Shown here one piece after another: positions 33,710-50,511 of a stretch of DNA of 64,000 bases. Position numbers and translations under genes: made by a program. Under the pieces are notes generated by a model, which was not told where the DNA came from, did not search any database, and saw nothing but the letters and a program-made list of their open reading frames with translations. The stretch spans positions 186,001 through 250,000 of the IMG/VR virus record IMGVR_UViG_3300017917_001123. One strand, 5' to 3'. Numbering within the stretch: the stretch's first letter is position 1; each line of letters starts with the position of its first letter.

Positions 33710-33710
33710 A

Positions 33711-36080: not shown

Positions 36081-36169
36081 AAAATACCTTTCTGTGTGTG
36101 TTTAAAAAGTTAACAGCAATCTCTTACTGTTTTAATAGTATAGCACCAAAATGCCCAAAAGTCAACCCC

Positions 36170-36908: not shown

Positions 36909-36989
36909 TTATGAGCTCCTTTTGTTTCAGTGTGTATGTATTATATGACCAATTTACCAGTTTGTCAACCAACCCTACAGCCTGTAGGG

Positions 36990-37352: not shown

Positions 37353-37409
37353 TTCTTGCTCCTTTTCCTAACTGTCTAGCCTATAGTATAACACCGGTTT
37401 TACCACTTG

Positions 37410-37655
37410 TCAACCGATATCTGCAGTAACCCTGTTCTCTGTAGGGTTATAGGTCAGGAACACTTTGCCAAAGGTAGCACCGCGCCCGTCTTCGTCGTGG
37501 TACTCTACTTTGTAGCAAAACTGTCCGCCGTTGGTTATGCCCAGGAACTTGGCACCCTTGAACGCCATCATCTTGTAACCGCAGGAGTCCAAGGTCATAG
37601 CTAAGGTGTGGGTGCTGTAGCTGGTTAGGAGTTTGAGTGTTTCAGCAGTAATCAT
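37410..37655 (-). CDS. Early hypothetical protein
   Basis: ATGA-coupled. Stop lies in the next promoter's TTGACA. Confidence 0.7.
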   Translation of the reverse strand: MITAETLKLLTSYSTHTLAMTLDSCGYKMMAFKGAKFLGITNGGQFCYKVEYHDEDGRGATFGKVFLTYNPTENRVTADIG

Positions 37656-37897
37656 CCCAGCACCACCACTTCTGTGCCCTCAACAACAGGCTCGCCTTCG
37701 TCATCGTAGTCAAAGTCGTCTTGGTCTACGACCTTGTGCATACGGTGGTAGTCGCTGTACTTGACATAGCCTACCTCTACGCTGTCTACAGTAGGAGCCA
37801 CTTGAGTGCGCCAGTGGTCGCCGTAGTTGTATTGGAAGTGGACTTCGGCGTCCGGGTTCTCCATTTGTAGCAGTTCAATGAGCTCGGAAACTTTCAT
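37652..37897 (-). CDS. Small acidic early protein
   Basis: MKVSELIELL...PDAEV N-terminus. Confidence 0.75.
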   Translation of the reverse strand: MKVSELIELLQMENPDAEVHFQYNYGDHWRTQVAPTVDSVEVGYVKYSDYHRMHKVVDQDDFDYDDEGEPVVEGTEVVVLG

Positions 37898-38142
37898 GCT
37901 TGCTCCTTAAAGTAAACGACTTTGATGCGTCCGTTAGTTTGTACGAAAGCACAGTTGTCTTCAAACTGTACATCCGGATGGGCTAGGACCTGCTTAGTAA
38001 ACATTTTAACAGTTCGCACGTTAACGGCACCCTGCCAATCCTCGCGGGCCACGCCCTCATTGTAACTGTACTTGCCGCGGCAACCGCACATGCAACCTAC
38101 TTTGCCCGAATAAACTTTTGCAACTTTGCTGACGTTTAACAT
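37894..38142 (-). CDS. Early protein with CMCGC motif
   Basis: YSGKVGCMCGCRGKY. Own promoter and RBS. Confidence 0.75.
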   Translation of the reverse strand: MLNVSKVAKVYSGKVGCMCGCRGKYSYNEGVAREDWQGAVNVRTVKMFTKQVLAHPDVQFEDNCAFVQTNGRIKVVYFKEQA

Positions 38143-38238
38143 TTCTGCTCCTGCTTGTTTAGTGTATGTGTGTAGTATAACACAAATGGTTTTACCTGTC
38201 AACCCCTTTTATAAAAGCCCTTTCGGGCTGTAGGGTTA

Positions 38239-38388
38239 TTAGGCAGGTACTACTTTAATAAGCATAAAACTGTTTAGGCTGTTAAGTTCCTGATGGAACG
38301 CGGCTACAGCTTGTTTACGTGTGCAAGGGCGTGTTAGGGCTGTATGCACTTGGTTTTTGTAGTAGTAATGTATAACGTATTGTTTCAT
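38239..38388 (-). CDS. 49 aa basic early protein (not in ORF track)
   Basis: Manual translation MKQYVIHYYYKNQVHTALTRPCTRKQAVAAFHQELNSLNSFMLIKVVPA. Own promoter and AGGAG. Confidence 0.7.
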   Translation of the reverse strand: MKQYVIHYYYKNQVHTALTRPCTRKQAVAAFHQELNSLNSFMLIKVVPA

Positions 38389-38438
38389 GGTCGCTCCTTT
38401 AGTGTATGTGTGTAGTATAACACACTTTTACCAAAGTG

Positions 38439-38660
38439 TCAACCCCAAGCGTTATATAACCCTATAGCGCATACGGATATAGCTACAACGTTAACAATGA
38501 ACTGTGGCTTATTTGCCACACGTATAGTCCATGTCAAGTACAGTAGCCCGCCTAGCAAACCAAACAGGGGGTCCAACTTTAGCTCCCTGTAAAAGTTCAT
38601 CAACACGTACATTGCCAAGATGCAGGCAGTGCCTGCCCACTGTAGTACTGTATTAAGCAT
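38439..38660 (-). CDS. Small three-TM membrane protein
   Basis: Hydrophobic. ATG overlaps the upstream stop. Confidence 0.7.
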   Translation of the reverse strand: MLNTVLQWAGTACILAMYVLMNFYRELKLDPLFGLLGGLLYLTWTIRVANKPQFIVNVVAISVCAIGLYNAWG

Positions 38661-38832
38661 TGTCAAATTCCATTACGTCACAACGCAAGTCGTCTACAAT
38701 GTCCTCAATCCTATTGTGCGTCTCATAGCACACGTCACTGTCACCCAGCACCTCTTGTATTAATGCGTCCGCATCCTCTAGCAAATCTATTGCCTCACGC
38801 AGTTTAGCTGCCTTTTGTTTTGCTGTTAACAT
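38653..38832 (-). CDS. 59 aa acidic helical early protein (not in ORF track)
   Basis: Manual translation MLTAKQKAAKLREAIDLLEDADALIQEVLGDSDVCYETHNRIEDIVDDLRCDVMEFDNA. Own promoter and AGGAG. Confidence 0.75.
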   Translation of the reverse strand: MLTAKQKAAKLREAIDLLEDADALIQEVLGDSDVCYETHNRIEDIVDDLRCDVMEFDNA

Positions 38833-38917
38833 GTTCGCTCCTTGTTGTTTAGTGTATGTGTGTAGTATAGCACAGTTTTACCACTTTGTCAACTGTGCTA
38901 TACAATAACCCTATGCT

Positions 38918-39283
38918 TTAGTCAACTACGTGCACGTCAGCAAAACTAGCATAGCCAAACTTAGCTTCCCAGCTAGCAATAAAGTCTCTGCCTACGTCTA
39001 AGCTAACAAAGTCATCACCCTGCATGCCCTGCTCGCTATAGCACAAGTCTACAACAAGCCCATGCTCTGTAATAAACTGCATTAAGTCTATTTTAAATTG
39101 TTTGTCTGTGTAAATTAGCCCGTCTTTATAAACGTCCCAAGTGTCTGTGTTAAAAAACACACGCAGTTCCCCATACTCCTTGTCCTCGCTAACAAAGCCC
39201 AAGCGCATGTCTGTAATCTCTACAGCTTTTTGCACGTTGCTCCAGTAGCCATCGCCGCTAGTGTTAAAAATAACTTTTTGCAT
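38918..39283 (-). CDS. Acidic early protein, 121 aa, proline-free
   Basis: TSGDGYWS...GLIYTD...YSEQGMQGDDFVSLDV. Own promoter and RBS. Confidence 0.8.
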   Translation of the reverse strand: MQKVIFNTSGDGYWSNVQKAVEITDMRLGFVSEDKEYGELRVFFNTDTWDVYKDGLIYTDKQFKIDLMQFITEHGLVVDLCYSEQGMQGDDFVSLDVGRDFIASWEAKFGYASFADVHVVD

Positions 39284-39382
39284 TTGTTTGCTCCTTGCAG
39301 TGTTTAAGTGTGTAGTATAGCACCAATTTACCACTTTGTCAACTACTACGTAAAAAAACCCTACGCAGGGTAGGGCTATTGT

Positions 39383-39655
39383 TTAAATGTTAGCTATAAC
39401 ACGAACGTATTGGAATCCGGCGCAACGGGTAGCAAAATTGCGTACAGAACCCGAACGCTTTACAGGGTTTTTAATTGTACTACGCAAAAAGTTATACAAT
39501 ACATCGGCGGAACTGGCATTGTTTAAAACAAAAGTAACACTACGACGCGGATTACTAGTGTTTGCTTTTGTTTTAAGCGTACGGTCGGTATATGTACGTA
39601 CATAGTTTACATTTGCTGCACGTGCTACAGCGCGGACTTGTTTAGTGCTTAACAT
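39383..39655 (-). CDS. Basic early protein, 90 aa, glutamate-free
   Basis: Own promoter and AGGAG. Confidence 0.7.
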   Translation of the reverse strand: MLSTKQVRAVARAANVNYVRTYTDRTLKTKANTSNPRRSVTFVLNNASSADVLYNFLRSTIKNPVKRSGSVRNFATRCAGFQYVRVIANI

Positions 39656-39703
39656 ACTTGCTCCTTTAGTGTCTGTGTAGTATAGCACCAATTTACCAGT
39701 TTG

Positions 39704-40228
39704 TCAAGTCTTTTTGTAAAAAATATGCTGTCCAATCTGTTGTATTTTCACAACACTCCTTGACCAAATAGGTTCTTTAATGTAGTCCGCATGATAGAAG
39801 GTACTATGTTCCAACCCTGCTACCCTATAGCCCTCCTGGAGCACCTTGTGAGCAACCTCCTTGCTTTCTGCCCACAAAGGCCCTTTAGGTTGAGCATAGC
39901 GTTTCTTCTTGTCCAATGTCCAGCTGAACTGAGCCCGAGCATAGACAACCTTACATATATCAGTACCCCAGCGTTTCTCCTTTAGTCGATTGAGTGTTAC
40001 CTGTGCGACAGCAAACTTACCTAACCGGTCCTCCACACCGGCTTCATAGAAAATGTTCTTGGCCAAACAGTCTGCTTCAGCAGAAGTATGCTGAACACGC
40101 TGTTGAGTCTTGATCAAATAGATCTTGATCTCTTGTATGTCATCGTGAAGGGTAGAGATCTCCAGTTGCTGGAACGCCAGGATGGCGAACATGGCCACCC
40201 CAGCTAGGATCTTCCATATGCCGTTCAC
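39704..40228 (-). CDS. Cell wall hydrolase (SleB/Hydrolase_2 family)
   Basis: CLAKNIFYEAG, AVAQVTLNR, ICKVVY..AQFSW, IGQHIFY. N-terminal TM segment. Confidence 0.9.
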   Translation of the reverse strand: MNGIWKILAGVAMFAILAFQQLEISTLHDDIQEIKIYLIKTQQRVQHTSAEADCLAKNIFYEAGVEDRLGKFAVAQVTLNRLKEKRWGTDICKVVYARAQFSWTLDKKKRYAQPKGPLWAESKEVAHKVLQEGYRVAGLEHSTFYHADYIKEPIWSRSVVKIQQIGQHIFYKKT

Positions 40229-40851
40229 TTGTGTGGCTCCAAGTTGTTCTTCTCTACACCGTCCTTATACCAGTCGGTGAGTTCCTCGTCCTCTTCGTCC
40301 TCATACTCGGCCATAGACTCGGAGATGCCATACTCATCATCCAGTTCGTCGCCAACGACATCACGCACGGTTTTAGAAGTCTCACCGCCGAACTCAATAC
40401 ACTCGTCACTGCCGTTATACCAACGACCTACATAGGCCATGCCTGGTTCGTAGTAGGTAGCCTCTACTTCAAAGCCGTCATCTACTAGGGCCTCGTAGAT
40501 GCCTACGGGCGGGGCCCACGCAGAGTCAAAGCCGAACTCAATGGTGTTGTTCTCAATCTTTATATCAGGGTCGTAGGCATCAACATCCCACTTGGTGCCC
40601 CAATGATTCACGCAGAAGTCATACCAGTTGGCCACACCATATTTGGCAATGTTCTCGGCACTCCGGCGCTCGAGCTCAATCTGGTCCGGATTCGTTTCGT
40701 CACCAACTCGACCTGCTACAATGTTCAGGTCCTCTGGAATCGGAACCACATGCTTACAGAAGTTGCCTTCCTTAATGGCCTCAACGAGGGCTTCAAGTTT
40801 CTGGGTATCTTCGTGGCTGATTACCACACGGTTGTTGCACCAATTAGGCAT
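40225..40851 (-). CDS. DUF1281/YubB-like ferredoxin-fold protein
   Basis: MPNWCNN, WYDFCVNHWGTKWD, FDSAWAPP, YYEPG motifs. Confidence 0.8.
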   Translation of the reverse strand: MPNWCNNRVVISHEDTQKLEALVEAIKEGNFCKHVVPIPEDLNIVAGRVGDETNPDQIELERRSAENIAKYGVANWYDFCVNHWGTKWDVDAYDPDIKIENNTIEFGFDSAWAPPVGIYEALVDDGFEVEATYYEPGMAYVGRWYNGSDECIEFGGETSKTVRDVVGDELDDEYGISESMAEYEDEEDEELTDWYKDGVEKNNLEPHK

Positions 40852-40861
40852 AGTAGGCTCC

Positions 40862-41125
40862 TTAGTTGAATTCGTAGAAAGTGACGCTAGGATCGATGCT
40901 TTGGAGTTCTTGAGCACAACGGCGCAGGAACTGGGCACGGGCACGGACTTGGCTTGCGGGCAGTTCGCCATCGCAGGTAAGGTTCTCTGGGCTAAGATCC
41001 GCATCCAGCGAATCCGCAATCTTTTGACGGTCCTGGGCGTTGAGCAGGCTGAGCTCCTTGCCGTTGAAAATTTTGGACCAGCTGTTTTTCATTTCAACAT
41101 AGGTTTCCAAGTTCTGAATATTCAT
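40862..41125 (-). CDS. Early hypothetical protein
   Basis: LSPENLTCDGE motif. Own promoter and RBS. Confidence 0.75.
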   Translation of the reverse strand: MNIQNLETYVEMKNSWSKIFNGKELSLLNAQDRQKIADSLDADLSPENLTCDGELPASQVRARAQFLRRCAQELQSIDPSVTFYEFN

Positions 41126-41182
41126 TTTCGCTCCTGTTTCGTTAGTGTCTAGTGTATAGTATAACATCGGTTTTACCGGATG

Positions 41183-41377
41183 TCAACCCCTTTTGGTAAC
41201 TTTTTTAACTAATACGAAAGTACGACCACGCAAATCGAACTTCAAAGGCTTATTGAACACCTTGTGCTCGTTGGTGTCTTTTTTGACATAGGCTAGGCAC
41301 TTGTCCCCGTCTAGGAGGTACAGGTGGTTACAGTCCGACCCGTCCTCCCAAACTGTAGTCTCACGCATCCACTTCAT
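41183..41377 (-). CDS. Early hypothetical protein
   Basis: ETTVW...NHLYLL...FDLRGRTF. Confidence 0.7.
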   Translation of the reverse strand: MKWMRETTVWEDGSDCNHLYLLDGDKCLAYVKKDTNEHKVFNKPLKFDLRGRTFVLVKKVTKRG

Positions 41378-41631
41378 TACATGCTCCAGTAGGCTTCTGA
41401 GCTGGGCGAGCAATAGCGCGGAGTGTCATAGCGTTCCTTATACTCAGCACCGCCCATCAAGTTCTTGCGAGTTACATAAGTTTCGTGGATTTCGCGAATG
41501 TATCCTGGGCGAACTGGGTTGGCTCGCTCCACAGCCGCCAGCGTCATGTCCGCAAAGTCCGTCTTGGACACCAGCTTCATGCCCTCTTTGCATCGCTTGT
41601 CCAACTTATAAATTTCTACGGTATATTCCAT
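41377..41631 (-). CDS. Early hypothetical protein
   Basis: Ends DTPRYCSPSSEAYWSM. Own promoter. Confidence 0.75.
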   Translation of the reverse strand: MEYTVEIYKLDKRCKEGMKLVSKTDFADMTLAAVERANPVRPGYIREIHETYVTRKNLMGGAEYKERYDTPRYCSPSSEAYWSM

Positions 41632-41755
41632 GTCGCTCTCCTTAGTGTCTAGTGTATAGTATAACACAGGTTTTACCACTTGTCAACCAAAAAAAGAGGG
41701 TGTTGCTTTTATACAACACCCCCATAAAGGGCCTGCGTTGCACAGGCCGGAGCAA

Positions 41756-42103
41756 TTAATCCAATCGGCTACCTGCGTAGGCTTCCACGCCCAACATCTG
41801 CTTCAGGAACTCTGCGGCCGCCTCGGCACCCGCTTCCAAAGTGTCCACGTTCTGGACGCCCAAACCACTGGGGTTCCACAGCTGAAGTCCACCACCGTAA
41901 GCAGGACGGAAACCTGCCTCCTTCAGTGCCATACCCAGTTTGGTGTTGCCACGAACCTTGTAGACCGTAACCCAAGCAAAGCCACAGGCGTATTGGTCAC
42001 GTCCGCCCAGCTTCTCCTGGAAGAACTTGGTTGCCGCTTGACGGGCTTCCTGCTTGGCACCCTCAACAAAACTCAGAACCTGCTCTTTAGTGAATCCACT
42101 CAT
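41756..42103 (-). CDS. Early hypothetical protein
   Basis: ACGFAWV...AYAGSRLD. Own promoter. Confidence 0.75.
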   Translation of the reverse strand: MSGFTKEQVLSFVEGAKQEARQAATKFFQEKLGGRDQYACGFAWVTVYKVRGNTKLGMALKEAGFRPAYGGGLQLWNPSGLGVQNVDTLEAGAEAAAEFLKQMLGVEAYAGSRLD

Positions 42104-42160
42104 CTTTCGCTCCTTTAGTTAACTATCTAGCCTATAGTATAGCACCGGTTTTACCTTTTG

Positions 42161-42859
42161 TCAACCGACAATTGGAATAACCCTACGAACGAATCCGGTA
42201 TTGTCCTTCTTAGCACGGCCCTTGGCTTTCAACCCAGCGATAACACCCTTAGGGTCCAAAAAGCGCAGGTCAGTGTCATCAGCATTGAAAACAGGGCGGC
42301 CCATGTAAGCTTCGGGCAGTTTATCAAAGACCATAGCCACGTTCATGCCCTGCGCCACAGCCTTAGCCACGTCCGCATCGTTACCGTCTGCGGCACTGAA
42401 GGTCAAGTGGTAGTTCTTAAGGTGCGACACTTTGCGGCCCAGGACCTTAGTGTAGTCATAGAACTGTACTTCCGGAAACTTCTCAATGATACCGTACTTC
42501 TCCCAGCTCAAGTCCGATGTACCATTCAAGCGGAACACGGGCGTCAAACCCAACTTCGCGGCCTGCTTGATGCCCAGTTTAATGTCTGCTTCCAAGTCCT
42601 TCATGAAAGCATCGCGGTTCTCAAAGAAGTACTTGGTCTTGCGGATGCGAGCCTGCTGGATCACGTTGGTGTTCTCACCTTTGCGGAACATGCCGCCACG
42701 ACCGGCAGTATTAAGGCAAGCGGCTGTACAACCTGCGGTGCGCTTAGGGCATACTTCTTTGCCCGACAAGTCAGCAGGAGCAAGGTGTAGGATGTAGCTC
42801 AGGTAACCCAGCTTCGTACCCTTCTGGATCTTAGGATTTGCAGTGCTCAATAGTTTCAT
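42161..42859 (-). CDS. GP88-family radical-SAM-like protein
   Basis: CPKRTAGCTAAC (Cx6Cx3C), FRLNGTSD, QFYDYTK, YHLTFS motifs. Confidence 0.75.
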   Translation of the reverse strand: MKLLSTANPKIQKGTKLGYLSYILHLAPADLSGKEVCPKRTAGCTAACLNTAGRGGMFRKGENTNVIQQARIRKTKYFFENRDAFMKDLEADIKLGIKQAAKLGLTPVFRLNGTSDLSWEKYGIIEKFPEVQFYDYTKVLGRKVSHLKNYHLTFSAADGNDADVAKAVAQGMNVAMVFDKLPEAYMGRPVFNADDTDLRFLDPKGVIAGLKAKGRAKKDNTGFVRRVIPIVG

Positions 42860-42930
42860 CTCTTGCTCCTTATTAATGTTTCTAGTCTCTAGTATAACAC
42901 CGGTTTTACCACTTGTCAACCAATACCCGT

Positions 42931-43269
42931 TCAATCTCCACGGGTATCTGTATTCAGCATGGGCTTCAACTTGCGGCGGAGTTCCACTTCCAAGTCGTGT
43001 CCTGCCTGCTTGCCACGTGCCGTGCCCAGAACGCGAACACCTATTTCAGTCTTGTCGTTGAGCTCACGCAGGGCCACGCAAAGGAGCCAATTCTTGCTTT
43101 CAGTCTTTGCGCGATAGAAATGCTTGGCTGCACGTGTCCGTGCGCTCTTAAGAGCTGTGGACTCTGTTTTGGCTGTGACACCAACATAAGTCATGCCGTT
43201 GACCGTAAGCTCATAGACTACATGAGTACGATCTGCACGCTTTTTACGGGGACGCTTTTCTAAGTTCAT
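42931..43269 (-). CDS. GIY-YIG-like protein (leaderless start)
   Basis: VVYEL..NGMTYVGVT...R...E...LN. ATG 6 nt after the -10. Confidence 0.6.
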   Translation of the reverse strand: MNLEKRPRKKRADRTHVVYELTVNGMTYVGVTAKTESTALKSARTRAAKHFYRAKTESKNWLLCVALRELNDKTEIGVRVLGTARGKQAGHDLEVELRRKLKPMLNTDTRGD

Positions 43270-43350
43270 GAGTGTAGTATAACACGGTTTTACCACTCTG
43301 TCAACCCCTAAAGAATACCCGAGTGGGCCGTAGGGTTTCAGAAATTCCGG

Positions 43351-43379
43351 TTGACATTCGGTAAAACCTGTGCTATACT
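43351..43379 (+). promoter_or_regulatory. Divergent plus-strand copy of the early promoter
   Basis: TTGACA-ttcGGTAAAacctgtgc-TATACT. Confidence 0.85.
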
Positions 43380-43513
43380 GTAGGCACAATGAGAGATAAG
43401 AAGAAAGCCATAAGGGCACGAGGGTTCGAACAGACTTGCTGGGGATGGACGGCGAGGGCCACCCCCCTATTTGGCTCGGTGATGAAAATATAGTAGGCTG
43501 CTCAAAATAGCCG

Positions 43514-43546
43514 CAAAAAAACCCTAGGCCAAATACCTCCTAGGGT
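43514..43546 (-). terminator. Minus-strand terminator
   Basis: ACCCTAGG-10nt-CCTAGGGT followed by a U run on the minus strand. Confidence 0.8.
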
Positions 43547-43781
43547 CTCCCTGCCCGGGTCTACCGCAACGTGACTCCGAACCGTTTGCGCTCAGTCTAC
43601 TCTAGGCCCAGGGCCTTCGACTCTAGCACAGTGACTTCTGTGGCAATTCACAGCACCTAAGGTCTGTACTGTTACCAGTATTCTTTCACGCTAGGCGTTT
43701 AACCGCATTATCAGTCTAGAGCAATTCCGTCACCTTAGTCATCGGCCGAATTGTTAACTGTTTCGTGTGCTGTTACGGCAC
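43514..43781 (-). ncRNA. Candidate structured non-coding RNA (~265 nt) downstream of tRNA
   Basis: No minus-strand ORF of note. Bounded by a TAAGTA box and a terminator. Multiple 6-7 bp complementary segments. Confidence 0.5.
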
Positions 43782-43802
43782 AAAATACTTAGCTCTGCCC
43801 GG

Positions 43803-43879
43803 TGGTGGGCCCAACAGGACTCGAACCTGTGACCAAGCGATTATGAGTCGCCTGCTCTAACCAACTGAGCTATAGGCCC
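43803..43879 (-). tRNA. tRNA-Ile2 (CAT, lysidine type)
   Basis: GGGCCTATAGCTCAGTTGGTTAGAGCAGGCGACTCATAATCGCTTGGTCACAGGTTCGAGTCCTGTTGGGCCCACCA. Cloverleaf with encoded CCA. Anticodon arm matches E. coli ileX as recalled. Confidence 0.9.
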
Positions 43880-43902
43880 CCGGGATTAATATTATACAGG
43901 AT

Positions 43903-44853
43903 TTACTTCCTTAATCCTAGTGCGGCCTGTAGCTTTTGGGCGGCATTCATAGTATTAGCAGTCTGCCCGTAGGGTGTATATGTTTGTCCCGCACCTGTGC
44001 CGTTGGGTTTTTCTGCTGATCCTAGGGCCTGTGCAGCGGGGTCACCAGTGGCCTGTGCAGCGGGGTTGGGTATGCCCGTGTCTACAAGCGATCTAACCTG
44101 TACACCTTCTGGATCCGCAATGTCTACGAAGGTCCAGTTGCCCAACAGCACAGGATTACCATCTACACGACGATTCCACTTACGCATATAGTACTTGTCT
44201 GCAGCGGGGTTCAGCCCGAGCTGGTCTACAAGGTTAGCAAACACAGAGTCGATCAGGATCATTGTCTCCGCACCTTCTAGAACTCGTAACCAATCGAATA
44301 CGGAATAACCTTCTAGCTCCCGCAACTCAATACATTGTACACCCGGTTCAACAATGGACAGATCAATGTCATAGCTCATATCACTAGCATGACCCTGATA
44401 TACCATATAGCGTTCTTGTGTGACTACACTATTATACAGTGATTTTTCTGCAGCGGGGTCCCGGTCTATACACTCGGCCAACTCCCACTTGTGACTAAAT
44501 GGTACTTCCGCTTGAGCATACTTGTATTGATCGAACTTAAACTGGGCAAAGTGACTCTTATTAGTACGCTCTGGATGACTACTCAAATACTGATACAACC
44601 ACAATTCCTCAGTTACTCCAATAGCGGTCAACTGCTTGTGCGGATTCTCATAAAAGAAAGCGCCATATTCATCTACGGGCACTGACATCCAACGAACCCA
44701 GGGAGCCGCTCGAACCATTTGTTGATAAAAGGGTTCACATACGGGCCAATATACTTCGTAGCCTCTACGTGTATATTCCTTAGCGATAGGTAGAGCAATG
44801 ATGATATCACCAAGTCCTCTACTCTGAATAAAACCAATTCTTTGTTGTGACAT
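43903..44853 (-). CDS. GT9-like glycosyltransferase
   Basis: SRGLGDIIIALP, DWLRVLEGAETMILIDSVFANL motifs. Confidence 0.7.
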   Translation of the reverse strand: MSQQRIGFIQSRGLGDIIIALPIAKEYTRRGYEVYWPVCEPFYQQMVRAAPWVRWMSVPVDEYGAFFYENPHKQLTAIGVTEELWLYQYLSSHPERTNKSHFAQFKFDQYKYAQAEVPFSHKWELAECIDRDPAAEKSLYNSVVTQERYMVYQGHASDMSYDIDLSIVEPGVQCIELRELEGYSVFDWLRVLEGAETMILIDSVFANLVDQLGLNPAADKYYMRKWNRRVDGNPVLLGNWTFVDIADPEGVQVRSLVDTGIPNPAAQATGDPAAQALGSAEKPNGTGAGQTYTPYGQTANTMNAAQKLQAALGLRK

Positions 44854-45083
44854 TTAAAGATCCTTATACGTGTGCAGCGGGGTCCCTACTATTAACATTC
44901 TGTAGGGTTCTGTAGACAATACTTACCACCCCATCCATCTGGCGCACGTATATACTGACGCGGACCATCACGCTCTAAGCAGTAGTCACGACCATAACAA
45001 CCTCGAGTAGTGATACAACCACTCAGTGATACCATAGCAAATATCACGATCAAAGATCTGCATGCATGCAAGAACAGCGGGGT
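44032..45083 (+). repeat. Same-strand dispersed motif TGCAGCGGGGT (5 exact copies, 1 partial)
   Basis: Copies at ~44032, 44056, 44200, 44449, 44873. CAGCGGGGT at 45075. Confidence 0.85.
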
Positions 45084-45098
45084 ATTAGCTTTCAACAT
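44892..45098 (-). CDS. Small putative lipoprotein
   Basis: Hydrophobic stretch plus LSGC lipobox. Confidence 0.55.
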   Translation of the reverse strand: MLKANTPLFLHACRSLIVIFAMVSLSGCITTRGCYGRDYCLERDGPRQYIRAPDGWGGKYCLQNPTEC

Positions 45099-45222
45099 AT
45101 ACTAAGAGATCTCCGTACTGTGACCGAGCTATAACAAGCGCATCATTATATGATTCAGCCAGTACGCCCACTCTAGTAGTGCCCCCGAACTGACTCTTTA
45201 CTGTAGCTGTGTATGTTTTCAT
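45085..45222 (-). CDS. Small early protein
   Basis: 45 aa behind the promoter at 45232-45260. Confidence 0.6.
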   Translation of the reverse strand: MKTYTATVKSQFGGTTRVGVLAESYNDALVIARSQYGDLLVYVES

Positions 45223-45267
45223 AGTGTATATAGTATAGCACCACCGCATGGTTTTGTCAATGATCAA

Positions 45268-45380
45268 TGGTAAAAACGGTGGAAAAAGGTGGTGAAAATG
45301 GTGGGGAAAGGTGGTAAAATTCAGGGATTTTGGGGCAGTTTTTGTGGCTTTTCAGCGATTTTTAGGCTAAAAAATTTTGG
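45268..45380 (+). repeat. Five ~10-12 bp GGTGG(T)AAAA-like units followed by phased T tracts
   Basis: tggtaaaaac ggtggaaaaa ggtggtgaaaat ggtggggaaa ggtggtaaaat. Confidence 0.75.
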
Positions 45381-45480
45381 ATCAGGGTGGGGGTGACAGG
45401 CATTACTGCAATACTTTCTACTGTTTTTCACAGTTTCCTGACTGTATTACCAGGCCCCCTAGAGCCTAATACCATTGTGC

Positions 45481-45741
45481 TTACACGTAGTAAGTGCCCA
45501 TGATGTTCTCTACACAGTTGCTGAACTGTAGTAGGAATAGTGTTTGAAGTTTGCTGTTAGTAGGTAATTCCACTACCCACGCTATGTTTGAGTATGTTAT
45601 TCGTGTCTTATAGCAGTCCACTCCGATCTGCTGACAGTATAGAAAAATGTCATCTAGTCTACTGTTGATTCTGTATAGAGTGGTTTTTCTGACGGAAGTG
45701 CTTGAGTTTGTTTTTGACATGGACACGTACAGCAGAGTCAT
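45481..45741 (-). CDS. Hypothetical protein (start uncertain)
   Basis: ORF ending TLFLLQFS... Confidence 0.5.
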   Translation of the reverse strand: MTLLYVSMSKTNSSTSVRKTTLYRINSRLDDIFLYCQQIGVDCYKTRITYSNIAWVVELPTNSKLQTLFLLQFSNCVENIMGTYYV

Positions 45742-46090
45742 TACGCATAAGATCTACTATAACACCTATTAAGAACCCGACCATCCACGCATAGGCCAGA
45801 GCACGTACACGGTACTTCTTATTGGTAATTGTGCACATTTCCTGCCATAACCATTCGTGTTCCGGGTCTTTATATACGGGCTGGTTCATCTGTTTAATTG
45901 TGCTTTACATATAGCACGTATTTGCCCCAACGCTCTTTGGCCATCATTTGTGCTTCTAGATAGCTACTGGCTTCCACTGTCTGCGTCCAGTTTTGTGTGG
46001 GCTGTGCTGGATTGTTTAGGACTACTGTATAAGTCATTGGTCTGCTCCAAAATGCTTGTATATGCTATTTAGTGGTGGTTAAATATCCGC

Positions 46091-46549
46091 ATGAGTCAAG
46101 ATAACAGTCAACCATTTTGGAAATCTATACGTGGTGTAGGCCGTCCCGGAACACATCGTCCTTTGTGGGAAGTAGAGTCTAAATCGGTTCCCTATAAAGA
46201 ATACGATGATCTTGAAGTCCGTCCCGCAGAGCATATTCCCGTGCCCGCTCCCATACATCAACGCTGTGGGCTCCCAGCAGATCGTGATTGGCCCAATCGT
46301 TGGTGGTGTCACTTCTGCTGGGAAGAAGTAAAAGCACCCATTAATCCCAATGCTATGATACCCAAGGCTGCAGTACCTGAGGGTGGACTATTGGAACCCA
46401 CATTGTCGGATCCCCGAGGGGAAACTATCTGTCCTAAGTGTGCTCAGAGTCGCAGACCTCGAGCGGATAATCGGGGTTGGGAATGTGGTTGTGGGGAAAC
46501 ATGGAATCCCGAGGGTGTGCGTCGTGTATCGCCGACTAATGGTTTTTAA
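46091..46549 (+). CDS. Cys/His-rich Zn-ribbon protein
   Basis: HQRCG, CHFC, CPKC, CGCG. TAAATA-N5-ATG start. Confidence 0.65.
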   Translation: MSQDNSQPFWKSIRGVGRPGTHRPLWEVESKSVPYKEYDDLEVRPAEHIPVPAPIHQRCGLPADRDWPNRWWCHFCWEEVKAPINPNAMIPKAAVPEGGLLEPTLSDPRGETICPKCAQSRRPRADNRGWECGCGETWNPEGVRRVSPTNGF

Positions 46550-46563
46550 AAGAGAGAATTATA

Positions 46564-47193
46564 ATGAGTTTTAATGGTAATCCAAATATTGAACAGCATC
46601 GTCTAAAGCCCCAGGGCGAACGCTACTACTATTCTAGTACTGAGTGGTTTTTTAACCTACAGGATCTAGATCGTTTGCGGGGTCTAGTGGGGCAGTTAGA
46701 AGCTGGTACTGTTCGCGCCTCGCATGAGCCGCAGAGTGTACAGCCTGAACTTAGATCTAGTATGGTTTCGTTTATCGAACCTACTGCGGATTCTGGTTGG
46801 CTATACGAAAAGATTGGGGAAGCTATACGTTTCCATAATCAGACCTACTATGGCTACGATATCACGGGTATTGAGCATCTACAGTTTACCGAATACCCTG
46901 CGGGCGAAGGCTTCTATAAGCCGCATATGGACTGGGGTTCTGGTATGGTTATGGGCCGCGGCGATCTTTGCCGTAAGCTATCCTTTAGCATACAGTTATC
47001 TAATCCTGATAGCTACGAAGGTGGCGACTTCCGTATTCTTAATGGGCAGGACTTTACGCAACAAAGTGAAAAATTACGGCAGTTTGGTACTATCGTTGTA
47101 TTCCCTAGCTGGATCCTACACGAAGTTACTCCTGTAACACGGGGTACTCGTCGAAGCCTAGTTGGCTGGTGTGTGGGTCCGGATTTCCGTTAA
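46564..47193 (+). CDS. 2OG-Fe(II) oxygenase (prolyl-hydroxylase/PiuC-like)
   Basis: HMD, RKLSFSIQL, YEGG, HEVTPVTRGTRRSLVGW motifs. Confidence 0.92.
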   Translation: MSFNGNPNIEQHRLKPQGERYYYSSTEWFFNLQDLDRLRGLVGQLEAGTVRASHEPQSVQPELRSSMVSFIEPTADSGWLYEKIGEAIRFHNQTYYGYDITGIEHLQFTEYPAGEGFYKPHMDWGSGMVMGRGDLCRKLSFSIQLSNPDSYEGGDFRILNGQDFTQQSEKLRQFGTIVVFPSWILHEVTPVTRGTRRSLVGWCVGPDFR

Positions 47194-47265
47194 AATTTTG
47201 TCTACCCCGATTTTTCTTTTGCAAGCCGCTTCGCGGAAGAGGGTTGGGTATAACGGAGTGGTAAA

Positions 47266-47823
47266 TTGACCCTGAAAATTGCTCAAAGCCTATTTGATCT
47301 TGTAGAAGGTTCTGTGCTAGAGCTGGGCTCGCATGACGGGTCGTGGTTTACCCAGTATCTAGTTGATCGTGCTGGTAGTGTCTGCTGTATAGAGCTAGAT
47401 GGTATTGCCCTAGCCCGTGTACGTGAACAATGGCCTAGAGTGCGCTGTCTACAAGCAGACTTTCATCAGGCTGTTTCGGGAGTGGGTTGTTACGATAACG
47501 TAGTTCTCTTTGGTGTGTTAGGTCATACCCCCAACCCACTGGGCTTGTTAGAAGATATTGTACACTATGTCAAACCCCGGCGTATATTCCTAGAAGCAGA
47601 GCCCGGAGGTGTTGTGCGTTGCGTTAGGGAGGGTGTTAATCAACCCGGACAGCGTCAAAGTCGTAGGGCTACCTGTGGACTCAGCATACAGTTAGGCACA
47701 CGCATATATACGGATGCTCTGGCTAATTTGGGCTACAAGCCCATTAGGACTTATAGGGAGTCAGAGGGCATCAAACAAGGATTAGAATACACAGTCTATG
47801 ATCTACACACAACAAGCACGTAG
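47266..47823 (+). CDS. Class I SAM-dependent methyltransferase
   Basis: VLELGSHDG, IE, YDNVVLFGVLGH motifs. Confidence 0.75.
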   Translation: MTLKIAQSLFDLVEGSVLELGSHDGSWFTQYLVDRAGSVCCIELDGIALARVREQWPRVRCLQADFHQAVSGVGCYDNVVLFGVLGHTPNPLGLLEDIVHYVKPRRIFLEAEPGGVVRCVREGVNQPGQRQSRRATCGLSIQLGTRIYTDALANLGYKPIRTYRESEGIKQGLEYTVYDLHTTST

Positions 47824-48934
47824 CATTCCGCCCTATACAAATACCCAGGCCTACGATAAGTTTACTAGGTTGGACAATCAGCCCGTGTTTCTCTACGATG
47901 AGTTGGACAGTACCGTACACGGAGTAGAGCCCGTAGATGCTTTCAATGAGCAGGTATGGGCAGAACTAAGGGTAAATCCTGAAGCCCGACTCTTGATCAA
48001 CTTCCCCGGGGACTTTCTAAATCTACACGATATATCTAAACTAAAGCTGGCCCAAGAGCAACACTCTATACCCGCAGATCGTATCTGGGTCATAGTCATG
48101 GACGCTAACGTTGTGGACTTTGTGGAACAGCGTTGGCAGGGTGTTAGGGTCTGTGCCTATAACTTATTGTTGGCTAGAATACAGATACCACACGTTGGTA
48201 ATCCAGGCGATCAGCGTTTCAGTGTCCTGAGCCGTAACTATAGACCCTGGCGTTTAGAGTTTTACCTACATCTGCTCAAGGCAGGGGTGCTGGATCGCAC
48301 GGTCTACAGCTTTCACAACATAGACCCTTACCTTACTGGCAAAAGCATCTACACCGCAGAAGATCTCTACAACGATGCTCGCAATGCGGGCTTTGACATC
48401 AAGGACAGCCAACTTAGAAACTGGTTTGCGGGCATACCCTACGATCTACCCAACAGCAATAAGTTCAACAAACATCACAATGCTACCTACGATGCTATCC
48501 GTCGTGCGGGGGTACACCTGTTAATTGAAAGCCATTTTGATCCCTACATTTACTGGCCCAGCTACAGGCATATGGACCCTCGTGAGTTTAGCCCAGGATT
48601 CCCTACAGAAAAGACCTACAAGGCCATGGCCTGTGCTCGTCCATTTATTGCTGTGACCACACCTTACTTCTTAGAAAGTGTTAGGGCTCTGGGCTTTAAA
48701 ACATTCAGCCCTTGGATAGACGAAAGCTATGATACTATTGTAGATAACCGGGCTCGTATGCGGGCCATTGCTGATGAAGTAGCCAGACTAAACAGCCTAG
48801 ACCCAGAAGAGTTTCAGACCCTGTTCTATAATCTAAGCTCTGTAATTCTACACAATTATAATTGGGTACAAGAACTACAACGCAGAAACACCCTGCCCGA
48901 TAACTGGGCCTGGCTCAAGGAACACATAGAATGA
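47798..48934 (+). CDS. Glycosyltransferase-like protein (GT10-like C-terminus)
   Basis: IES...FPTEKTYKAM...PFI...GFKTFSPWIDESYD...HNY. Confidence 0.6.
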   Translation: MIYTQQARSIPPYTNTQAYDKFTRLDNQPVFLYDELDSTVHGVEPVDAFNEQVWAELRVNPEARLLINFPGDFLNLHDISKLKLAQEQHSIPADRIWVIVMDANVVDFVEQRWQGVRVCAYNLLLARIQIPHVGNPGDQRFSVLSRNYRPWRLEFYLHLLKAGVLDRTVYSFHNIDPYLTGKSIYTAEDLYNDARNAGFDIKDSQLRNWFAGIPYDLPNSNKFNKHHNATYDAIRRAGVHLLIESHFDPYIYWPSYRHMDPREFSPGFPTEKTYKAMACARPFIAVTTPYFLESVRALGFKTFSPWIDESYDTIVDNRARMRAIADEVARLNSLDPEEFQTLFYNLSSVILHNYNWVQELQRRNTLPDNWAWLKEHIE

Positions 48935-49683
48935 AACTAGCACAAGAGCTCTACGAATACTTTAATACCCTACACGTCAAATACCCACCCAAGGAGTATA
49001 GGGTAGATTGGCAAGAAGGTAAACCCGTACCCTACCTAGTTATAGATAACTTCTTACCTGATCATATCTACAGGGCCGCACAGGCAGAGATAAAAGATAT
49101 ACCCCCACATCAATGGACACAGTTCACACGTAGGGGTAGCCTAATGAATGAGTGTAAAAATCTAGCAGGTGCGCCCATACTACAGACCTTAACCCACTGC
49201 TTTAATAGCGGTGTGTTCTTAGATTGGCTAGAGGGCTTTACAGGCTTAGAACGTGTTATATCGGATCCACGACTTGTGGGTGCGGGCTTGAGCACATGCC
49301 AACCCGGGCATAGCCTAAAGCTACACACAGACTTTAACTGGAACGAACAGCTACATCTTAATAGGGCTATGAGCCTTATTCTATACCTAGCCCCTGAATG
49401 GGACCCTGCTTGGGGTGGGGGACTAGAGTTCTGGGACTTTGAGCGTACCCAATGTGTTAGCAAAGTGGACTGTTTGCCTAATCGCTTGTTGTTGTGGCTA
49501 TATGACGAGCGCCTAATACACGGCTACCCAGAGCCTATTCAATGCCCCCAAGGGCATCAACGTGAAAACCTGCGCTTGTTCTACTACAAGAGTAACAGCA
49601 CCCCCGAGAGCCAGCCACATCGCTCACTGTACTGGTGGGACGAGGCCCTAAAGGCCCCGTACGATGTTAGAACTGAAAAGTAA
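48931..49683 (+). CDS. 2OG-Fe(II) oxygenase (Oxy_3-like)
   Basis: LHTDFN, WGGGLEFW, NRL, HGYP...R motifs. Confidence 0.9.
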   Translation: MKLAQELYEYFNTLHVKYPPKEYRVDWQEGKPVPYLVIDNFLPDHIYRAAQAEIKDIPPHQWTQFTRRGSLMNECKNLAGAPILQTLTHCFNSGVFLDWLEGFTGLERVISDPRLVGAGLSTCQPGHSLKLHTDFNWNEQLHLNRAMSLILYLAPEWDPAWGGGLEFWDFERTQCVSKVDCLPNRLLLWLYDERLIHGYPEPIQCPQGHQRENLRLFYYKSNSTPESQPHRSLYWWDEALKAPYDVRTEK

Positions 49684-50511
49684 TTAGAATGTGCCGTTGT
49701 TAGCACGTTCCGCTAGAACAAAAGGATTATTCCATTGCTGTAGTTCTGGAATGCTCTGTACTAGATAGGGCTTGTTAAGGGCTTGAGCAATAGCACAGAC
49801 CCAACCGTTTGGTGTACAGATAGTTTGGTTCATACCACTGATCCACTGTGCTAGTTCTCCAGGGTGATCTACTTCTACGTGGCTAGTTTGAATTTTAGTT
49901 ACATTCTTGAACTCTTGATATTCGGACTTTGTGCCTACAAATACGCTGACAGCACCTACGTTCTGTTGGGCCCATTGACTGTAGACATCTCTATCTTCCC
50001 ACCCAGAACCGGCAAACACAACACCCTTGCCCTGCGGGCGTCCTGGAATAGCAGGAATGTCTAGCCAGCTGTTCATACGGATCTGTTGCCACTTGGTCCA
50101 GTGAACATGCGTTACTTTACCAAAGCGATCCATGGGATGCATGTTAAAGCGATTGTCCATGTCTATAGTATAATCAATCTTATCTAAGTCATGATCTACA
50201 ATTTCGCCTGCCCATACATTCACACTCTTAACCCACTTTTGGTTTTGTACCAATGAGCAGATAACATCAAAGTCATCTTGATTTAGACGACCCTGCCATT
50301 CCGGTGTAGCGTACTGCCCTTTGTAGTATAGGGTCTTTGGCGGAATCAACCCTAGGGCAATATAAACATGCCCACCCCCAAGTGCTTTGACATAGGCCAT
50401 TGCTTGGATTACTTCAATGGGTGTTCCAGAAATCTTAAATGTAGTTTCCCCGTAAGCGTGTTCAGGGTTGAACAAGGGGTTTGCGCTGTGATCGGTATGT
50501 TCTAGTTTCAT
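49684..50511 (-). CDS. Degenerate GT9-like protein, paralog of 28667..29494
   Basis: Shared LGGG, GRL.Q.DF, VW.GE, VFVGTK.E, ELA..I.G, AIAQ.L. Confidence 0.65.
   Translation of the reverse strand: MKLEHTDHSANPLFNPEHAYGETTFKISGTPIEVIQAMAYVKALGGGHVYIALGLIPPKTLYYKGQYATPEWQGRLNQDDFDVICSLVQNQKWVKSVNVWAGEIVDHDLDKIDYTIDMDNRFNMHPMDRFGKVTHVHWTKWQQIRMNSWLDIPAIPGRPQGKGVVFAGSGWEDRDVYSQWAQQNVGAVSVFVGTKSEYQEFKNVTKIQTSHVEVDHPGELAQWISGMNQTICTPNGWVCAIAQALNKPYLVQSIPELQQWNNPFVLAERANNGTF

What the first reader, a model, noticed from the sequence alone, without database searches (positions are those of the whole stretch)
44027..45083. Oriented TGCAGCGGGGT array written into coding and intergenic DNA
Seen: five exact 11-mers in ~850 bp plus a 9-mer, all on one strand. 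Four encode (D/N)PAA with identical codons in the glycosyltransferase, one is intergenic (44873), and the 9-mer is in another gene in a different frame (45075). I did not notice the 11-mer elsewhere. It contains GCAGC, which the rest of the window appears to avoid. Inference: a polar protein-binding array (origin iterons, packaging or partition sites, Chi/KOPS-like) beside the 45.3 kb intergenic element.
Basis: partly seen in the sequence, partly recalled or inferred. Interest (0 to 1): 0.7.

Follow-up and report, generated by a model that had tools for sequence, protein, structure and literature searches.

The report
Oriented repeat array in origin-like module
A short DNA word repeated six times on one strand of a giant pond phage is a real, conserved signal found in hundreds of related uncultured phages, and it most likely marks a replication origin or early-gene control region.

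Summary
TGCAGCGGGGT occurs five times, plus one 9-mer, on one strand within 1.05 kb, and nowhere else in the 331.6 kb jumbo T4-like phage genome. It persists even though it contains the genome's two most-avoided words (TGCA, GCWGC).

It is a nucleic-acid-level element. Codons under the motif are frozen among orthologs (7/8 against 54/190 elsewhere). Orthologs without the motif lack the P-A-A peptide.

About 170 distinct copies of a 14-nt consensus, AAnACCCCG(C/T)TG(T/C)A, occur in related uncultured phages, 164:7 on one strand. The array is tied to a conserved module rather than to the glycosyltransferase gene. The module order is:
- array
- G-rich repeats and an invariant block
- A-tracts with DnaA-box-like sites
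- σ70 promoter
- tRNA-Ile2(CAU)
- a small GIY-YIG nuclease

In the window's lineage, genes inserted between the promoter and the tRNA have acquired motif copies.

The best reading (~0.4) is iteron-like protein-binding sites of an origin-like early-control region, comparable to the T4 oriE iterons. The main rivals are a transcription operator or roadblock, RNA-level sites, and nuclease or recombination sites. I reject Chi/KOPS-like signals, promoters, host repeats and chance. The binding factor is unknown.

The parts
44032..44042 (-). Motif copy 1 (sense ACCCCGCTGCA), codons 271-274 of the GT-like gene. With copy 2 it forms a 24-nt tandem pair, each copy followed by CAGGCC.
44056..44066 (-). 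Motif copy 2, codons 263-266 of the GT-like gene (N-P-A-A).
44200..44210 (-). Motif copy 3, codons 215-218 (N-P-A-A). The position is conserved in L012 and L013.
44449..44459 (-). Motif copy 4, codons 132-135 (D-P-A-A). The position is conserved in L012-L015.
44873..44883 (-). Motif copy 5, intergenic, 20 nt upstream of the GT-like ATG. A copy is conserved 24-32 nt upstream of the ATG in L012-L014.
45075..45083 (-). Motif copy 6 (9-mer ACCCCGCTG), codons 6-8 (T-P-L) of the lipoprotein-like ORF. A copy at the same place is seen in L012.
43903..44853 (-). GT-B fold (GT9-like) glycosyltransferase-like gene, 316 aa, that carries four copies. Its C-terminal ~60 aa are low-confidence or disordered.
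44892..45098 (-). 68-aa Cys-rich lipoprotein-like ORF (signal peptide plus LSGC lipobox by eye), conserved in relatives.
45085..45222 (-). 45-aa small ORF, a conserved family found next to the GT gene. It has a weak match to the PHROG 'RNA polymerase inhibitor' family (E 0.008-0.04).
45232..45260 (-). σ70-type promoter TTGACA-17-TATACT with TG (11 of 12), homologous to the promoter that drives the tRNA directly in tight-array relatives.
45270..45316 (-). Four TTTTnCCACC boxes at ~11-bp phase. Each matches the DnaA-box consensus TTWTNCACA at 8 of 9 positions. The stretch is A-tract rich.
45380..45409 (-). Conserved non-coding block (TAATGCCTGTCACCCCCACC...), homologous to the near-invariant TATAGCCTCTCnnCCCCACC block of relatives.
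43891..43898 (-). Extended -10 element (TGTATAAT) between the GT stop codon and the tRNA. This is a likely tRNA-proximal promoter, read directly from the sequence.
43803..43879 (-). tRNA with CAU anticodon, of tRNA-Ile2 (lysidine) type. It is the downstream anchor of the module.
42931..43272 (-). Stand-alone GIY-YIG nuclease domain protein of 112 aa, a conserved downstream member of the module.

Best explanation
The TGCAGCGGGGT copies (ACCCCGCTGCA on the transcribed-sense strand) are binding sites for a sequence-specific factor that is probably phage-encoded. They belong to a single-copy, conserved cis-acting module of a large clade of uncultured T4-like freshwater phages.

The module order is: oriented site array, G-rich short repeats, an invariant non-coding block, A-tracts with DnaA-box-like sites, a strong σ70 early promoter, tRNA-Ile2(CAU), and a small GIY-YIG nuclease.

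The most likely function is an origin-like region in which the sites act as iterons. The factor would occupy 2-6 like-oriented sites cooperatively, in preferred registers of 26, 31 and 57 bp. Host DnaA and intrinsic bending would organise the neighbouring DNA, and early transcription would activate or prime initiation, as proposed for T4 oriE.

In the window's lineage, a small-ORF plus glycosyltransferase cassette sits between the promoter and the tRNA. The upstream copy has been lost. New copies have been selected inside the inserted genes, mostly at pre-existing Asn/Asp-Pro codons, which overwrites the local peptide as P-A-A.

Shown: reality of the array, its uniqueness in the genome, nucleotide-level selection, strict polarity, module membership and site turnover. 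Inferred: protein binding, the identity of the factor, and the replication role.
For: - Single locus. The motif is unique to one place in 331.6 kb. It is likewise single-locus and strand-exclusive in other large relatives: 0/7, 0/5 and 0/6.
- Selection on the DNA. Codons under the motif are frozen in 7 of 8 columns against 54 of 190 elsewhere (p=0.0012). An ortholog without the motif has no P-A-A.
- Maintained against restriction-site purging.
- The element. A 14-nt linear consensus from 171 copies with no conserved hairpin. 164 sense against 7 antisense copies over 638 kb.
- Spacing. Sharp preferred values of 26, 57, 31 and 52 nt with unconserved spacers.
- Position. All copies lie 160-1900 nt upstream of the tRNA(CAU) and none lie downstream.
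- Module blocks are conserved and homologous to window 45.23-45.42 kb.
- DnaA-box consensus is 8-10-fold enriched between array and promoter. Perfect or phased boxes occur in L092 and L091.
- The array sits at a strand-switch point and a local cumulative GC-skew minimum.
- A lineage-wide concerted variant (ACCTTG in all four copies in L091; ACCCCGTT in other lineages) argues for a co-evolving binder.
- It is not a host repeat.
- Precedent: T4 oriE has direct-repeat 'iterons', an early promoter and transcriptional divergence (PMC3016281).
Against: - No initiator (Rep-like) gene was identified next to the array.
- The dominant spacings (26 and 57 bp) are half-integral helical turns, unlike the ~22-bp same-face spacing of classical iterons.
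- In the window the six copies are scattered over 1 kb of transcribed DNA and lie downstream of the promoter and DnaA-like boxes. In tight-array relatives they lie upstream.
- The strict agreement with the direction of transcription fits an RNA-level or non-template-strand role equally well.
- DnaA-box consensus sites are enriched but not universal (15 sites in 30 regions). The window's boxes are 8/9 matches.
- The GC-skew minimum is explained by gene orientation alone.
- There are no replication, coverage or binding data.
Confidence: 0.4

Rival explanations
1. DNA-level transcription control. The sites are operators, roadblock sites or upstream regulatory sites for a phage regulator. This regulator would time or insulate the early σ70 promoter(s) and the tRNA unit, for example by shutting off the early operon or blocking read-through from the upstream operon into the strong tRNA promoter.
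For: - In tight-array loci the array starts right after the stop codon of the upstream operon and lies 270-330 nt upstream of the tRNA promoter.
- In one lineage a copy fills the spacer and extended -10 of the conserved promoter (L041, L044).
- A-tract bent DNA lies between the array and the promoter.
- It is a single locus per genome.
- Cooperative spacing.
Against: - Only 2 of 172 copies overlap a promoter, and there is no fixed register to any -10 element.
- Copies up to 1.2 kb downstream of the promoter, inside coding DNA, are unusual for operators.
- No regulator gene was identified.
- The DnaA-box-like cluster is not explained.
Confidence: 0.2
2. RNA-level, or non-template-strand, element. 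The motif works in the transcript as repeated binding or cleavage sites for an RNA-binding protein or endoribonuclease. Its effect would be on translation, stability or processing of the early operon and tRNA precursor.
For: - Strict sense-strand polarity, 164:7.
- A conserved copy lies 20-38 nt upstream of the GT start codon, next to the Shine-Dalgarno sequence.
- Copies spread along the transcribed interval when genes are inserted between promoter and tRNA, in any reading frame.
- Spacing of 26 nt and pairs of sites, which need no helical phasing.
Against: - One locus per 330 kb genome is atypical for an RNA regulon signal.
- Tight arrays lie upstream of the promoter and would be transcribed only by read-through.
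- The promoter-embedded copies in L041 and L044 would not be in that promoter's RNA.
- There is no conserved RNA structure and no Rfam match.
- No RNA data exist.
Confidence: 0.2
3. Nuclease or recombination sites. The motif is recognised or nicked by the conserved neighbouring GIY-YIG nuclease. Alternatively it acts as a local Chi-like attenuator of exonuclease resection that sets recombination or co-conversion boundaries next to the tRNA and nuclease genes.
For: - A stand-alone GIY-YIG nuclease with invariant catalytic-type residues is a conserved module member.
- It is found in 37 of 53 loci with arrays and 0 of 16 without.
- Polarity points toward the nuclease and tRNA side.
- The GT gene lies on either side of the module in different lineages, so rearrangements happen here.
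Against: - The co-occurrence is confounded by synteny, and 8 loci with room for the gene lack the nuclease.
- The 112-aa protein has no evident DNA-targeting domain.
- The complex prediction could not be evaluated.
- The 15-mer is not repeated in any bacterial genome.
- There is no evidence of nicks.
Confidence: 0.1
4. Packaging (pac/cos-type) or partition (centromere-type) sites.
For: It is a polar, single-locus array of direct repeats.
Against: - The large terminase gene lies 36 kb away at window 7484-9073, and no small-terminase or partition gene is nearby.
- The module is not at a consistent distance from contig ends: 230 kb into G000, and 5.7 kb from an end in G001.
- These are T4-like phages, which to my knowledge package by headful without a strict pac site.
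Confidence: 0.05
5. No function: a chance repeat, a protein-level (D/N)PAA repeat with favoured codons, or a remnant of recent duplication.
For: Copies in the gene use pre-existing conserved Asn/Asp-Pro positions (ENP and RDP in the family consensus).
Against: - No shuffle of 100 reached 5 hits.
- There are intergenic and other-frame copies.
- Codons are frozen.
- The motif is conserved in about 170 copies across loci with only 40-75% protein identity, and it occurs in non-coding arrays with 26-nt spacing.
Confidence: 0.01

Closest known systems
Bacteriophage T4 oriE 'iterons' (12-nt direct repeats near repEA/repEB)
   Same: - T4-like phage.
- A cluster of short direct repeats conserved in syntenic regions of relatives.
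- Next to an early (host σ70) promoter.
- At a point where transcription switches strand and strand composition shifts.
- Role still undefined (PMC3016281).
   Different: - The sequence is different and the site is 14 nt, not 12 nt.
- Copies are not evenly spaced.
- This array is linked to a tRNA(CAU), DnaA-box-like sites and a GIY-YIG gene.
- Homology to repEA/repEB was not tested.
- Copies migrate into inserted genes.
Iteron-type theta origins of plasmids and phages (P1 oriR, F ori2, RK2 oriV, R6K gamma, lambda ori inside gene O)
   Same: - Like-oriented direct repeats next to DnaA boxes and an A/T-rich bent region.
- Iterons can lie inside coding DNA (lambda O).
- Lineage-specific site variants co-evolve with the binder.
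(All from my knowledge of these systems.)
   Different: - No Rep or initiator gene found.
- Spacing of 26, 31 and 57 bp rather than ~22 bp.
- Window copies are dispersed over 1 kb.
- The host phages are lytic and T4-like.
Oriented terminator/barrier arrays beside stable-RNA genes (for example TTF-I 'Sal box' repeats flanking rDNA units; Tus-Ter)
   Same: Repeated polar protein-binding sites lie between an upstream transcription unit and a strong stable-RNA promoter, and orientation matters. This is an analogy from general knowledge.
   Different: These are eukaryotic or enterobacterial systems with unrelated sequences and proteins. No barrier activity has been shown here.
Chi / KOPS / DNA uptake sequences
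   Same: A short, strand-oriented word.
   Different: Those signals are spread genome-wide with replication-linked orientation. This motif occurs at one locus per genome and is not repeated in bacterial genomes.

Membership tests
Iteron-type replication origin | Three or more direct repeats in one orientation at a single locus | tested here: met
   Six copies on one strand at one locus in 331.6 kb. Relatives have 2-6 copies, 164:7 by strand.
Iteron-type replication origin | Regular spacing that places sites on one helical face (about 21-23 bp) | tested here: not met
   The spacing peaks are at 26, 57, 31 and 52 nt. Window spacings are 24, 144, 249, 424 and 202 nt.
Iteron-type replication origin | Adjacent DnaA boxes and an A/T-rich or bent region | tested here: inconclusive
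   TTWTNCACA is 8-10-fold enriched between array and promoter, but only 15 sites occur in 30 regions. Perfect or phased boxes occur in L092 and L091. The window has four 8/9 matches at 11-bp phase plus A-tracts.
Iteron-type replication origin | Cognate initiator gene encoded next to the iterons | tested here: not met
   Neighbours are a GT-B enzyme, small ORFs, a GIY-YIG nuclease, GP88 and 2OG oxygenases. No Rep-like family was found.
Iteron-type replication origin | Replication initiates at the locus | not testable with these tools
   Only assembled contigs of a pond metagenome are available, with no raw-read depth and no cultured host.
T4 oriE-like origin | Early host-type promoter beside the repeats, at a point of transcriptional divergence and skew shift | tested here: met
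   Promoter at 45260-45232. The strand switch is at 45.3-46.1 kb. There is a local cumulative GC-skew minimum. For the T4 features see PMC3016281.
T4 oriE-like origin | Homologs of repEA/repEB nearby | not tested
Chi / KOPS-like genome-wide polar signal | Many copies spread over the genome with orientation bias | tested here: not met
   All copies lie within 1.05 kb. The 15-mer gives only single, chance-level hits in bacterial genomes.
Promoter for a phage-encoded single-subunit RNA polymerase | Phage RNAP gene present and promoter copies at many transcription units | tested here: not met
   No PF00940 match, although the control genomes did not ring either. No RNAP was found among proteins of 700-1300 aa, while T4-like core genes were. 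The motif occurs at one locus only.
σ70 promoter element or transcription-start motif | Fixed register to a -10 or -35 hexamer | tested here: not met
   No offset shows enrichment of -10-like hexamers. Only 2 of 172 copies lie inside a strong promoter.
pac/cos packaging site | Next to terminase genes or at genome ends | tested here: not met
   TerL is 36 kb away. The module's position relative to contig ends is inconsistent.
attP arm-type sites of a tRNA-targeting integrase | Integrase gene adjacent and sites on both arms around the tRNA core | tested here: not met
   No copy lies downstream of the tRNA. No integrase was found among the conserved neighbours.
Known structured RNA / CRISPR-like repeat | Rfam match or conserved hairpin | tested here: not met
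   Only the tRNA matches Rfam. Nothing is conserved outside the 14-nt linear motif.

The most novel reading that the evidence does not exclude
The array is a previously undescribed kind of phage cis-element. It would be a mobile 'site cloud' that must lie within about 0.2-2 kb upstream of a tRNA-Ile2/GIY-YIG unit and is re-created inside any gene inserted there. A dedicated factor, possibly the stand-alone GIY-YIG nuclease acting as a strand-specific nickase, would read it on one strand (non-template DNA or RNA). That would couple early transcription to nick- or R-loop-primed replication or recombination in a large clade of uncultured T4-like phages.
Probability: 0.12. Interest if true: 0.8.

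Novelty: new variant of a known kind. Interest (0 to 1): 0.6.

Why it matters
Replication origins and early-control regions of T4-like and jumbo phages are poorly defined. Even the T4 oriE repeats have no established role.

This work gives a sharply defined 14-nt site, a conserved module with ordered blocks, and natural variants. The variants include a concerted CC→TT lineage, C/T lineages, and lineages where the sites were forced into coding DNA. All of this spans hundreds of uncultured freshwater phages. Together it provides a concrete bait for finding the binding factor and a marker for locating the same region in new phage genomes.

It is also a clean example of a non-coding signal dictating a peptide (P-A-A) inside an enzyme, and surviving strong purging of restriction sites.

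Tried and rejected
1. DNA similarity to cultured phages: only the tRNA matched. The GT gene has no homolog in cultured phages.
2. Pfam, PHROG and PDB sequence searches of the GT gene and neighbours: mostly empty.
3. Phage-RNAP promoter idea, prompted by the resemblance of AATACCCCGCTGTAG to T7-type promoters and a weak Gp2-like ORF. No RNAP was found and the motif is at a single locus. Rejected.
4. σ70 promoter or transcription-start register: no enrichment.
5. Host repeat (USS, REP or Chi): only single hits per bacterial genome.
6. Base-pairing of the motif with the adjacent tRNA: at most a 7-bp match with a wobble, and it is lost in the window's TGCA variant (by eye). Rejected.
7. Hairpin, terminator or i-motif: only a minority of copies are followed by GGG(G), and nothing in the logo is conserved there.
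8. L053 repeat array: it has an 18-nt period and is a coding repeat on the other strand. Unrelated.
9. Protein-DNA complex prediction for the GIY-YIG protein: the tool does not evaluate such complexes. No evidence either way.
10. RNA or raw-read evidence: only Logan contigs of a pond metagenome are available, and no RNA run was listed.
11. Literature search for the motif: only unrelated primer hits.
12. The primary T4 oriE paper (PMC94188) is not held.
Full report
**1. The observation**

TGCAGCGGGGT occurs exactly at window 44032, 44056, 44200, 44449 and 44873, all on the + strand. With one mismatch allowed there are no further hits, and none of 100 dinucleotide-preserving shuffles reached five. 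The 9-mer CAGCGGGGT is also at 45075.

The window belongs to a single 331,570-bp virus contig with 40.9% GC. In that whole genome the 11-mer occurs only at these five places and never on the other strand. The 9-mer occurs six times on + and never on -.

The genes here run on the minus strand, so the sense form is ACCCCGCTGCA.
- Four copies lie in ORF 43903..44853 and read (G/A)AC CCC GCT GCA, which encodes D/N-P-A-A.
- One copy lies 20 nt upstream of that ORF's ATG, in the gap after ORF 44892..45098.
- The 9-mer covers codons 6-8 (T-P-L) of ORF 44892..45098, in a different frame.

GCWGC is the most under-represented 5-mer of the genome (88 sites, obs/exp 0.18). TGCA is the most under-represented 4-mer (198 sites, obs/exp 0.14). 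The motif is these two words overlapped.

**2. Selection acts on the nucleotides, not the protein**

The ORF has about 700 unnamed metagenomic homologs. Its AlphaFold model (pLDDT 83) has a GT-B fold closest to GT9 heptosyltransferases.

Four close orthologous loci at 76-86% protein identity carry ACCCCGCTGCAC. The copies lie:
- at the same codons (132, 215, 263, 271) and 24-32 nt upstream of the ATG;
- at lineage-specific places (codons 70, 135, 172, and about 700 nt upstream);
- always on the sense strand.

I looked at codon columns where all five close orthologs share the amino acid. The codon is identical in 7 of 8 columns under the motif and in 54 of 190 elsewhere (Fisher p = 0.0012). A 75%-identical ortholog that lacks the motif at these positions has DLAR, TEGK and DMNA instead of DPAA, NPAA and NPAA.

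Neither occurred.

**3. The motif family**

A profile-based search fetched 80 viral loci holding homologs at 39-75% identity.
- ACCCCG(C/T)T occurs 164 times on the gene-sense strand and 7 times on the other, over 638 kb.
- A logo from 171 distinct copies gives a 14-nt linear consensus, A-A-D-A-C-C-C-C-G-Y-T-G-Y-A. Nothing outside it is conserved, so there is no conserved hairpin.
- Within a genome all copies share the same variant: ACCCCGCTGCA in the window's lineage, AAAACCCCGTTGC(A/C) in another, and AAWACCTTGCTGTAGC in all four copies of L091.
- Relatives whose DNA has no GCWGC at all use variants that avoid GCWGC.
- In three other large records the 9-mer is strand-exclusive (0/7, 0/5, 0/6) and clustered at one place.
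- The 15-mer occurs in 94 viral stretches. In bacterial genomes it gives only single, scattered hits of the kind chance would give, so it is not a host repeat.
- No paper in the library mentions it in a phage context.

**4. The array belongs to a module, not to the gene**

In most loci a tRNA with a CAU anticodon lies downstream on the same strand. In loci that have this tRNA, every motif copy lies between -1900 and -160 of its start and none lies downstream of it.

Two architectures exist.

*Tight-array loci.* Here 2-4 copies of AATACCCCGCTGTAG begin right after the stop codon of the upstream operon. The conserved non-coding stretch that follows runs in this order:
- G-rich tandem repeats of about 11 nt;
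- a near-invariant block, CATTTGACTATAGCCTCTCnnCCCCACC;
- A-tracts with CCAC-type boxes;
- a σ70 promoter, TTGAC(C/A)-17-TATAAT, with an extended -10;
- a short leader;
- the tRNA.

In these loci the glycosyltransferase lies 0.5-5 kb further upstream and carries no motif copy.

*The window's architecture.* Small ORFs and the glycosyltransferase lie between that promoter and the tRNA. Motif copies are scattered through them, in untranslated gaps and in coding DNA in any frame.

The window's element at 45.23-45.42 kb aligns block for block with the relatives' non-coding region. The closest relatives L013 and L015, and tight-array loci, keep an intact copy upstream of it. The window has lost that copy.

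Other findings on the module:
- The window's tRNA is 87% identical to E. coli genes annotated tRNA-Ile, so it is the lysidine-type tRNA-Ile2.
- The first conserved protein downstream is a 112-aa protein whose model (pLDDT 89) matches GIY-YIG nuclease domains in its eleven best PDB hits. Its Y, Y, R, H, E and N positions are invariant.
- That gene is present in 37 of 53 loci with arrays and in none of 16 without. This is confounded by synteny, and 8 loci with room for it lack it.

**5. Clues to mechanism**

- (a) There is one locus per genome of about 330 kb. That is typical of origins, packaging sites or a master control region. It is not typical of promoters, terminators or RNA-regulon signals.
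- (b) Adjacent copies show sharp preferred distances of 26 (19 times), 57 (13), 31 (7) and 52 nt (5), with unconserved spacers. A register constraint of this kind is expected for cooperative binding.
- (c) DnaA-box consensus sites are 8-10-fold enriched between array and promoter. L092 has two perfect TTATCCACA boxes, and L091 has four boxes in 11-bp-phased pairs. The window has four TTTTnCCACC boxes at 11-bp phase.
- (d) The module lies where transcription switches strand (minus-strand block 30-45.3 kb, plus-strand genes from 46.1 kb). This is also a local minimum of cumulative GC skew. Gene orientation alone could produce that minimum.
- (e) The phage is T4-like: tail sheath, baseplate wedge, RIIA, B-family polymerase, and TerL 50% identical to PA5oct. 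T4 oriE offers a direct precedent. It has a cluster of 12-nt direct repeats conserved in relatives, dependence on an early promoter, and a location at a transcriptional divergence with a compositional shift. The role of its iterons has never been established (PMC3016281).

**6. Weighing the readings**

I commit to iteron-like sites of an origin-like early-control module (0.4).

The points against it:
- No initiator gene was found.
- The 26/57-bp spacings are half-integral helical turns.
- The window copies are dispersed over 1 kb of transcribed DNA.
- Strict co-orientation with transcription fits an RNA or non-template-strand role just as well.

The rivals:
- A DNA-level transcription operator or roadblock (0.2). 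It is favoured by the position between an upstream operon and a strong tRNA promoter, and by one lineage with a copy inside the promoter. It is weakened by the absence of any fixed promoter register.
- An RNA-level site (0.2). It is favoured by the polarity, the copy next to the ribosome-binding site, and the spread along the transcribed interval. It is weakened by the single locus, by arrays lying upstream of the promoter, and by the lack of structure or any Rfam match.
- A nuclease or recombination site linked to the GIY-YIG gene (0.1).
- Packaging or partition (0.05).

Rejected outright:
- Chance or a protein-driven repeat.
- Chi/KOPS-type signals.
- Host repeats.
- σ70 promoter elements.
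- Phage-RNAP promoters. No RNAP was found, with the caveat that the PF00940 control genomes did not ring either.

**7. What could not be done**

- Only assembled contigs of a pond metagenome hold this DNA, and no RNA run was listed. Depth, read ends and transcripts could not be examined.
- The complex predictor does not evaluate protein-DNA pairs.
- No cultured phage carries the gene.

The binding factor and the function therefore remain inferences.

**8. Verdict**

The array is real, strongly selected and widely conserved, and it is an oriented cis-element. The real context is a conserved tRNA-linked module.

I rate it a new variant of a known kind (iteron-like arrays of phage origins or control regions), with moderately high interest. 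The grounds are the breadth of conservation, the turnover of sites into coding DNA, and the fact that it makes the function of oriE-type repeats testable.

Noticed in passing
whole genome G000 (window = 186001-250000): Several restriction-type palindromes are strongly avoided besides TGCA and GCWGC. AGCGCT has 0 sites against ~58 expected. TGCGCA has obs/exp 0.09, GTATAC 0.10, GCACGC 0.16 and AAGCTT 0.23. This suggests a host rich in restriction systems.
   Followed up: partly
window 29000-49000 (genome 215-235 kb): A compositional island with 48% GC against ~40% elsewhere. It is less purged of TGCA and GCWGC. It consists of small minus-strand ORFs of early-region type and includes the module.
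   Followed up: partly
window 42931-43272 (-): A 112-aa stand-alone GIY-YIG nuclease domain protein with no Pfam, PHROG or PDB sequence hit. It was recognised only by predicted fold. It is highly conserved (about 76% mean column identity) just downstream of the tRNA in many relatives.
   Followed up: yes
window 43803-43879 (-): The tRNA that ARAGORN calls tRNA-Met(CAT) is of tRNA-Ile2 (lysidine) type. It is 87% identical to E. coli genes annotated tRNA-Ile and 96% identical to the tRNA of phiKZ-like Pseudomonas phages.
   Followed up: partly
window 45085-45222 (-): A 45-aa ORF directly after the σ70 promoter has a weak match to the PHROG 'RNA polymerase inhibitor' family (E 0.008-0.04). By eye it shares the pattern of T7 Gp2. 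The family sits next to the GT gene in 19 loci.
   Followed up: partly
window 43351-43379 (+) and inverted repeat 43370-43392 / 45219-45241: A second near-consensus σ70 promoter (TTGACA-17-TATACT with TG) points the opposite way, toward the tRNA and the GT gene. It mirrors the promoter at 45260-45232. It could make an antisense RNA that carries the motif as UGCAGCGGGGU.
   Followed up: no
window 46091-50511 and 56447-61921: A divergently transcribed cluster holds three 2OG-Fe(II) oxygenases, a methyltransferase, a cell-wall hydrolase and two radical-SAM proteins. It is syntenic in relatives and may be a modification pathway.
   Followed up: no
genome G000 30483-38849, 96779-110761, 140648-151423, 151838-158728, 158801-172114: Five giant ORFs of 2,296-4,660 aa. 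They were not annotated here.
   Followed up: no
L089 6405-6446; L054, L075 and L092 leaders: Palindromes of the CTGT-N8-10-ACAG type (LexA-box-like) lie between the conserved promoter and the tRNA in several relatives. TGTATA-rich words are enriched around the module.
   Followed up: no
L329 (G001 339595 region), flipped coordinates ~1975-2025: An isolated motif copy sits in the loop of a 9-bp inverted repeat (GCAGTGCTA ... TAGCACTGC) about 8 kb from the main array.
   Followed up: no
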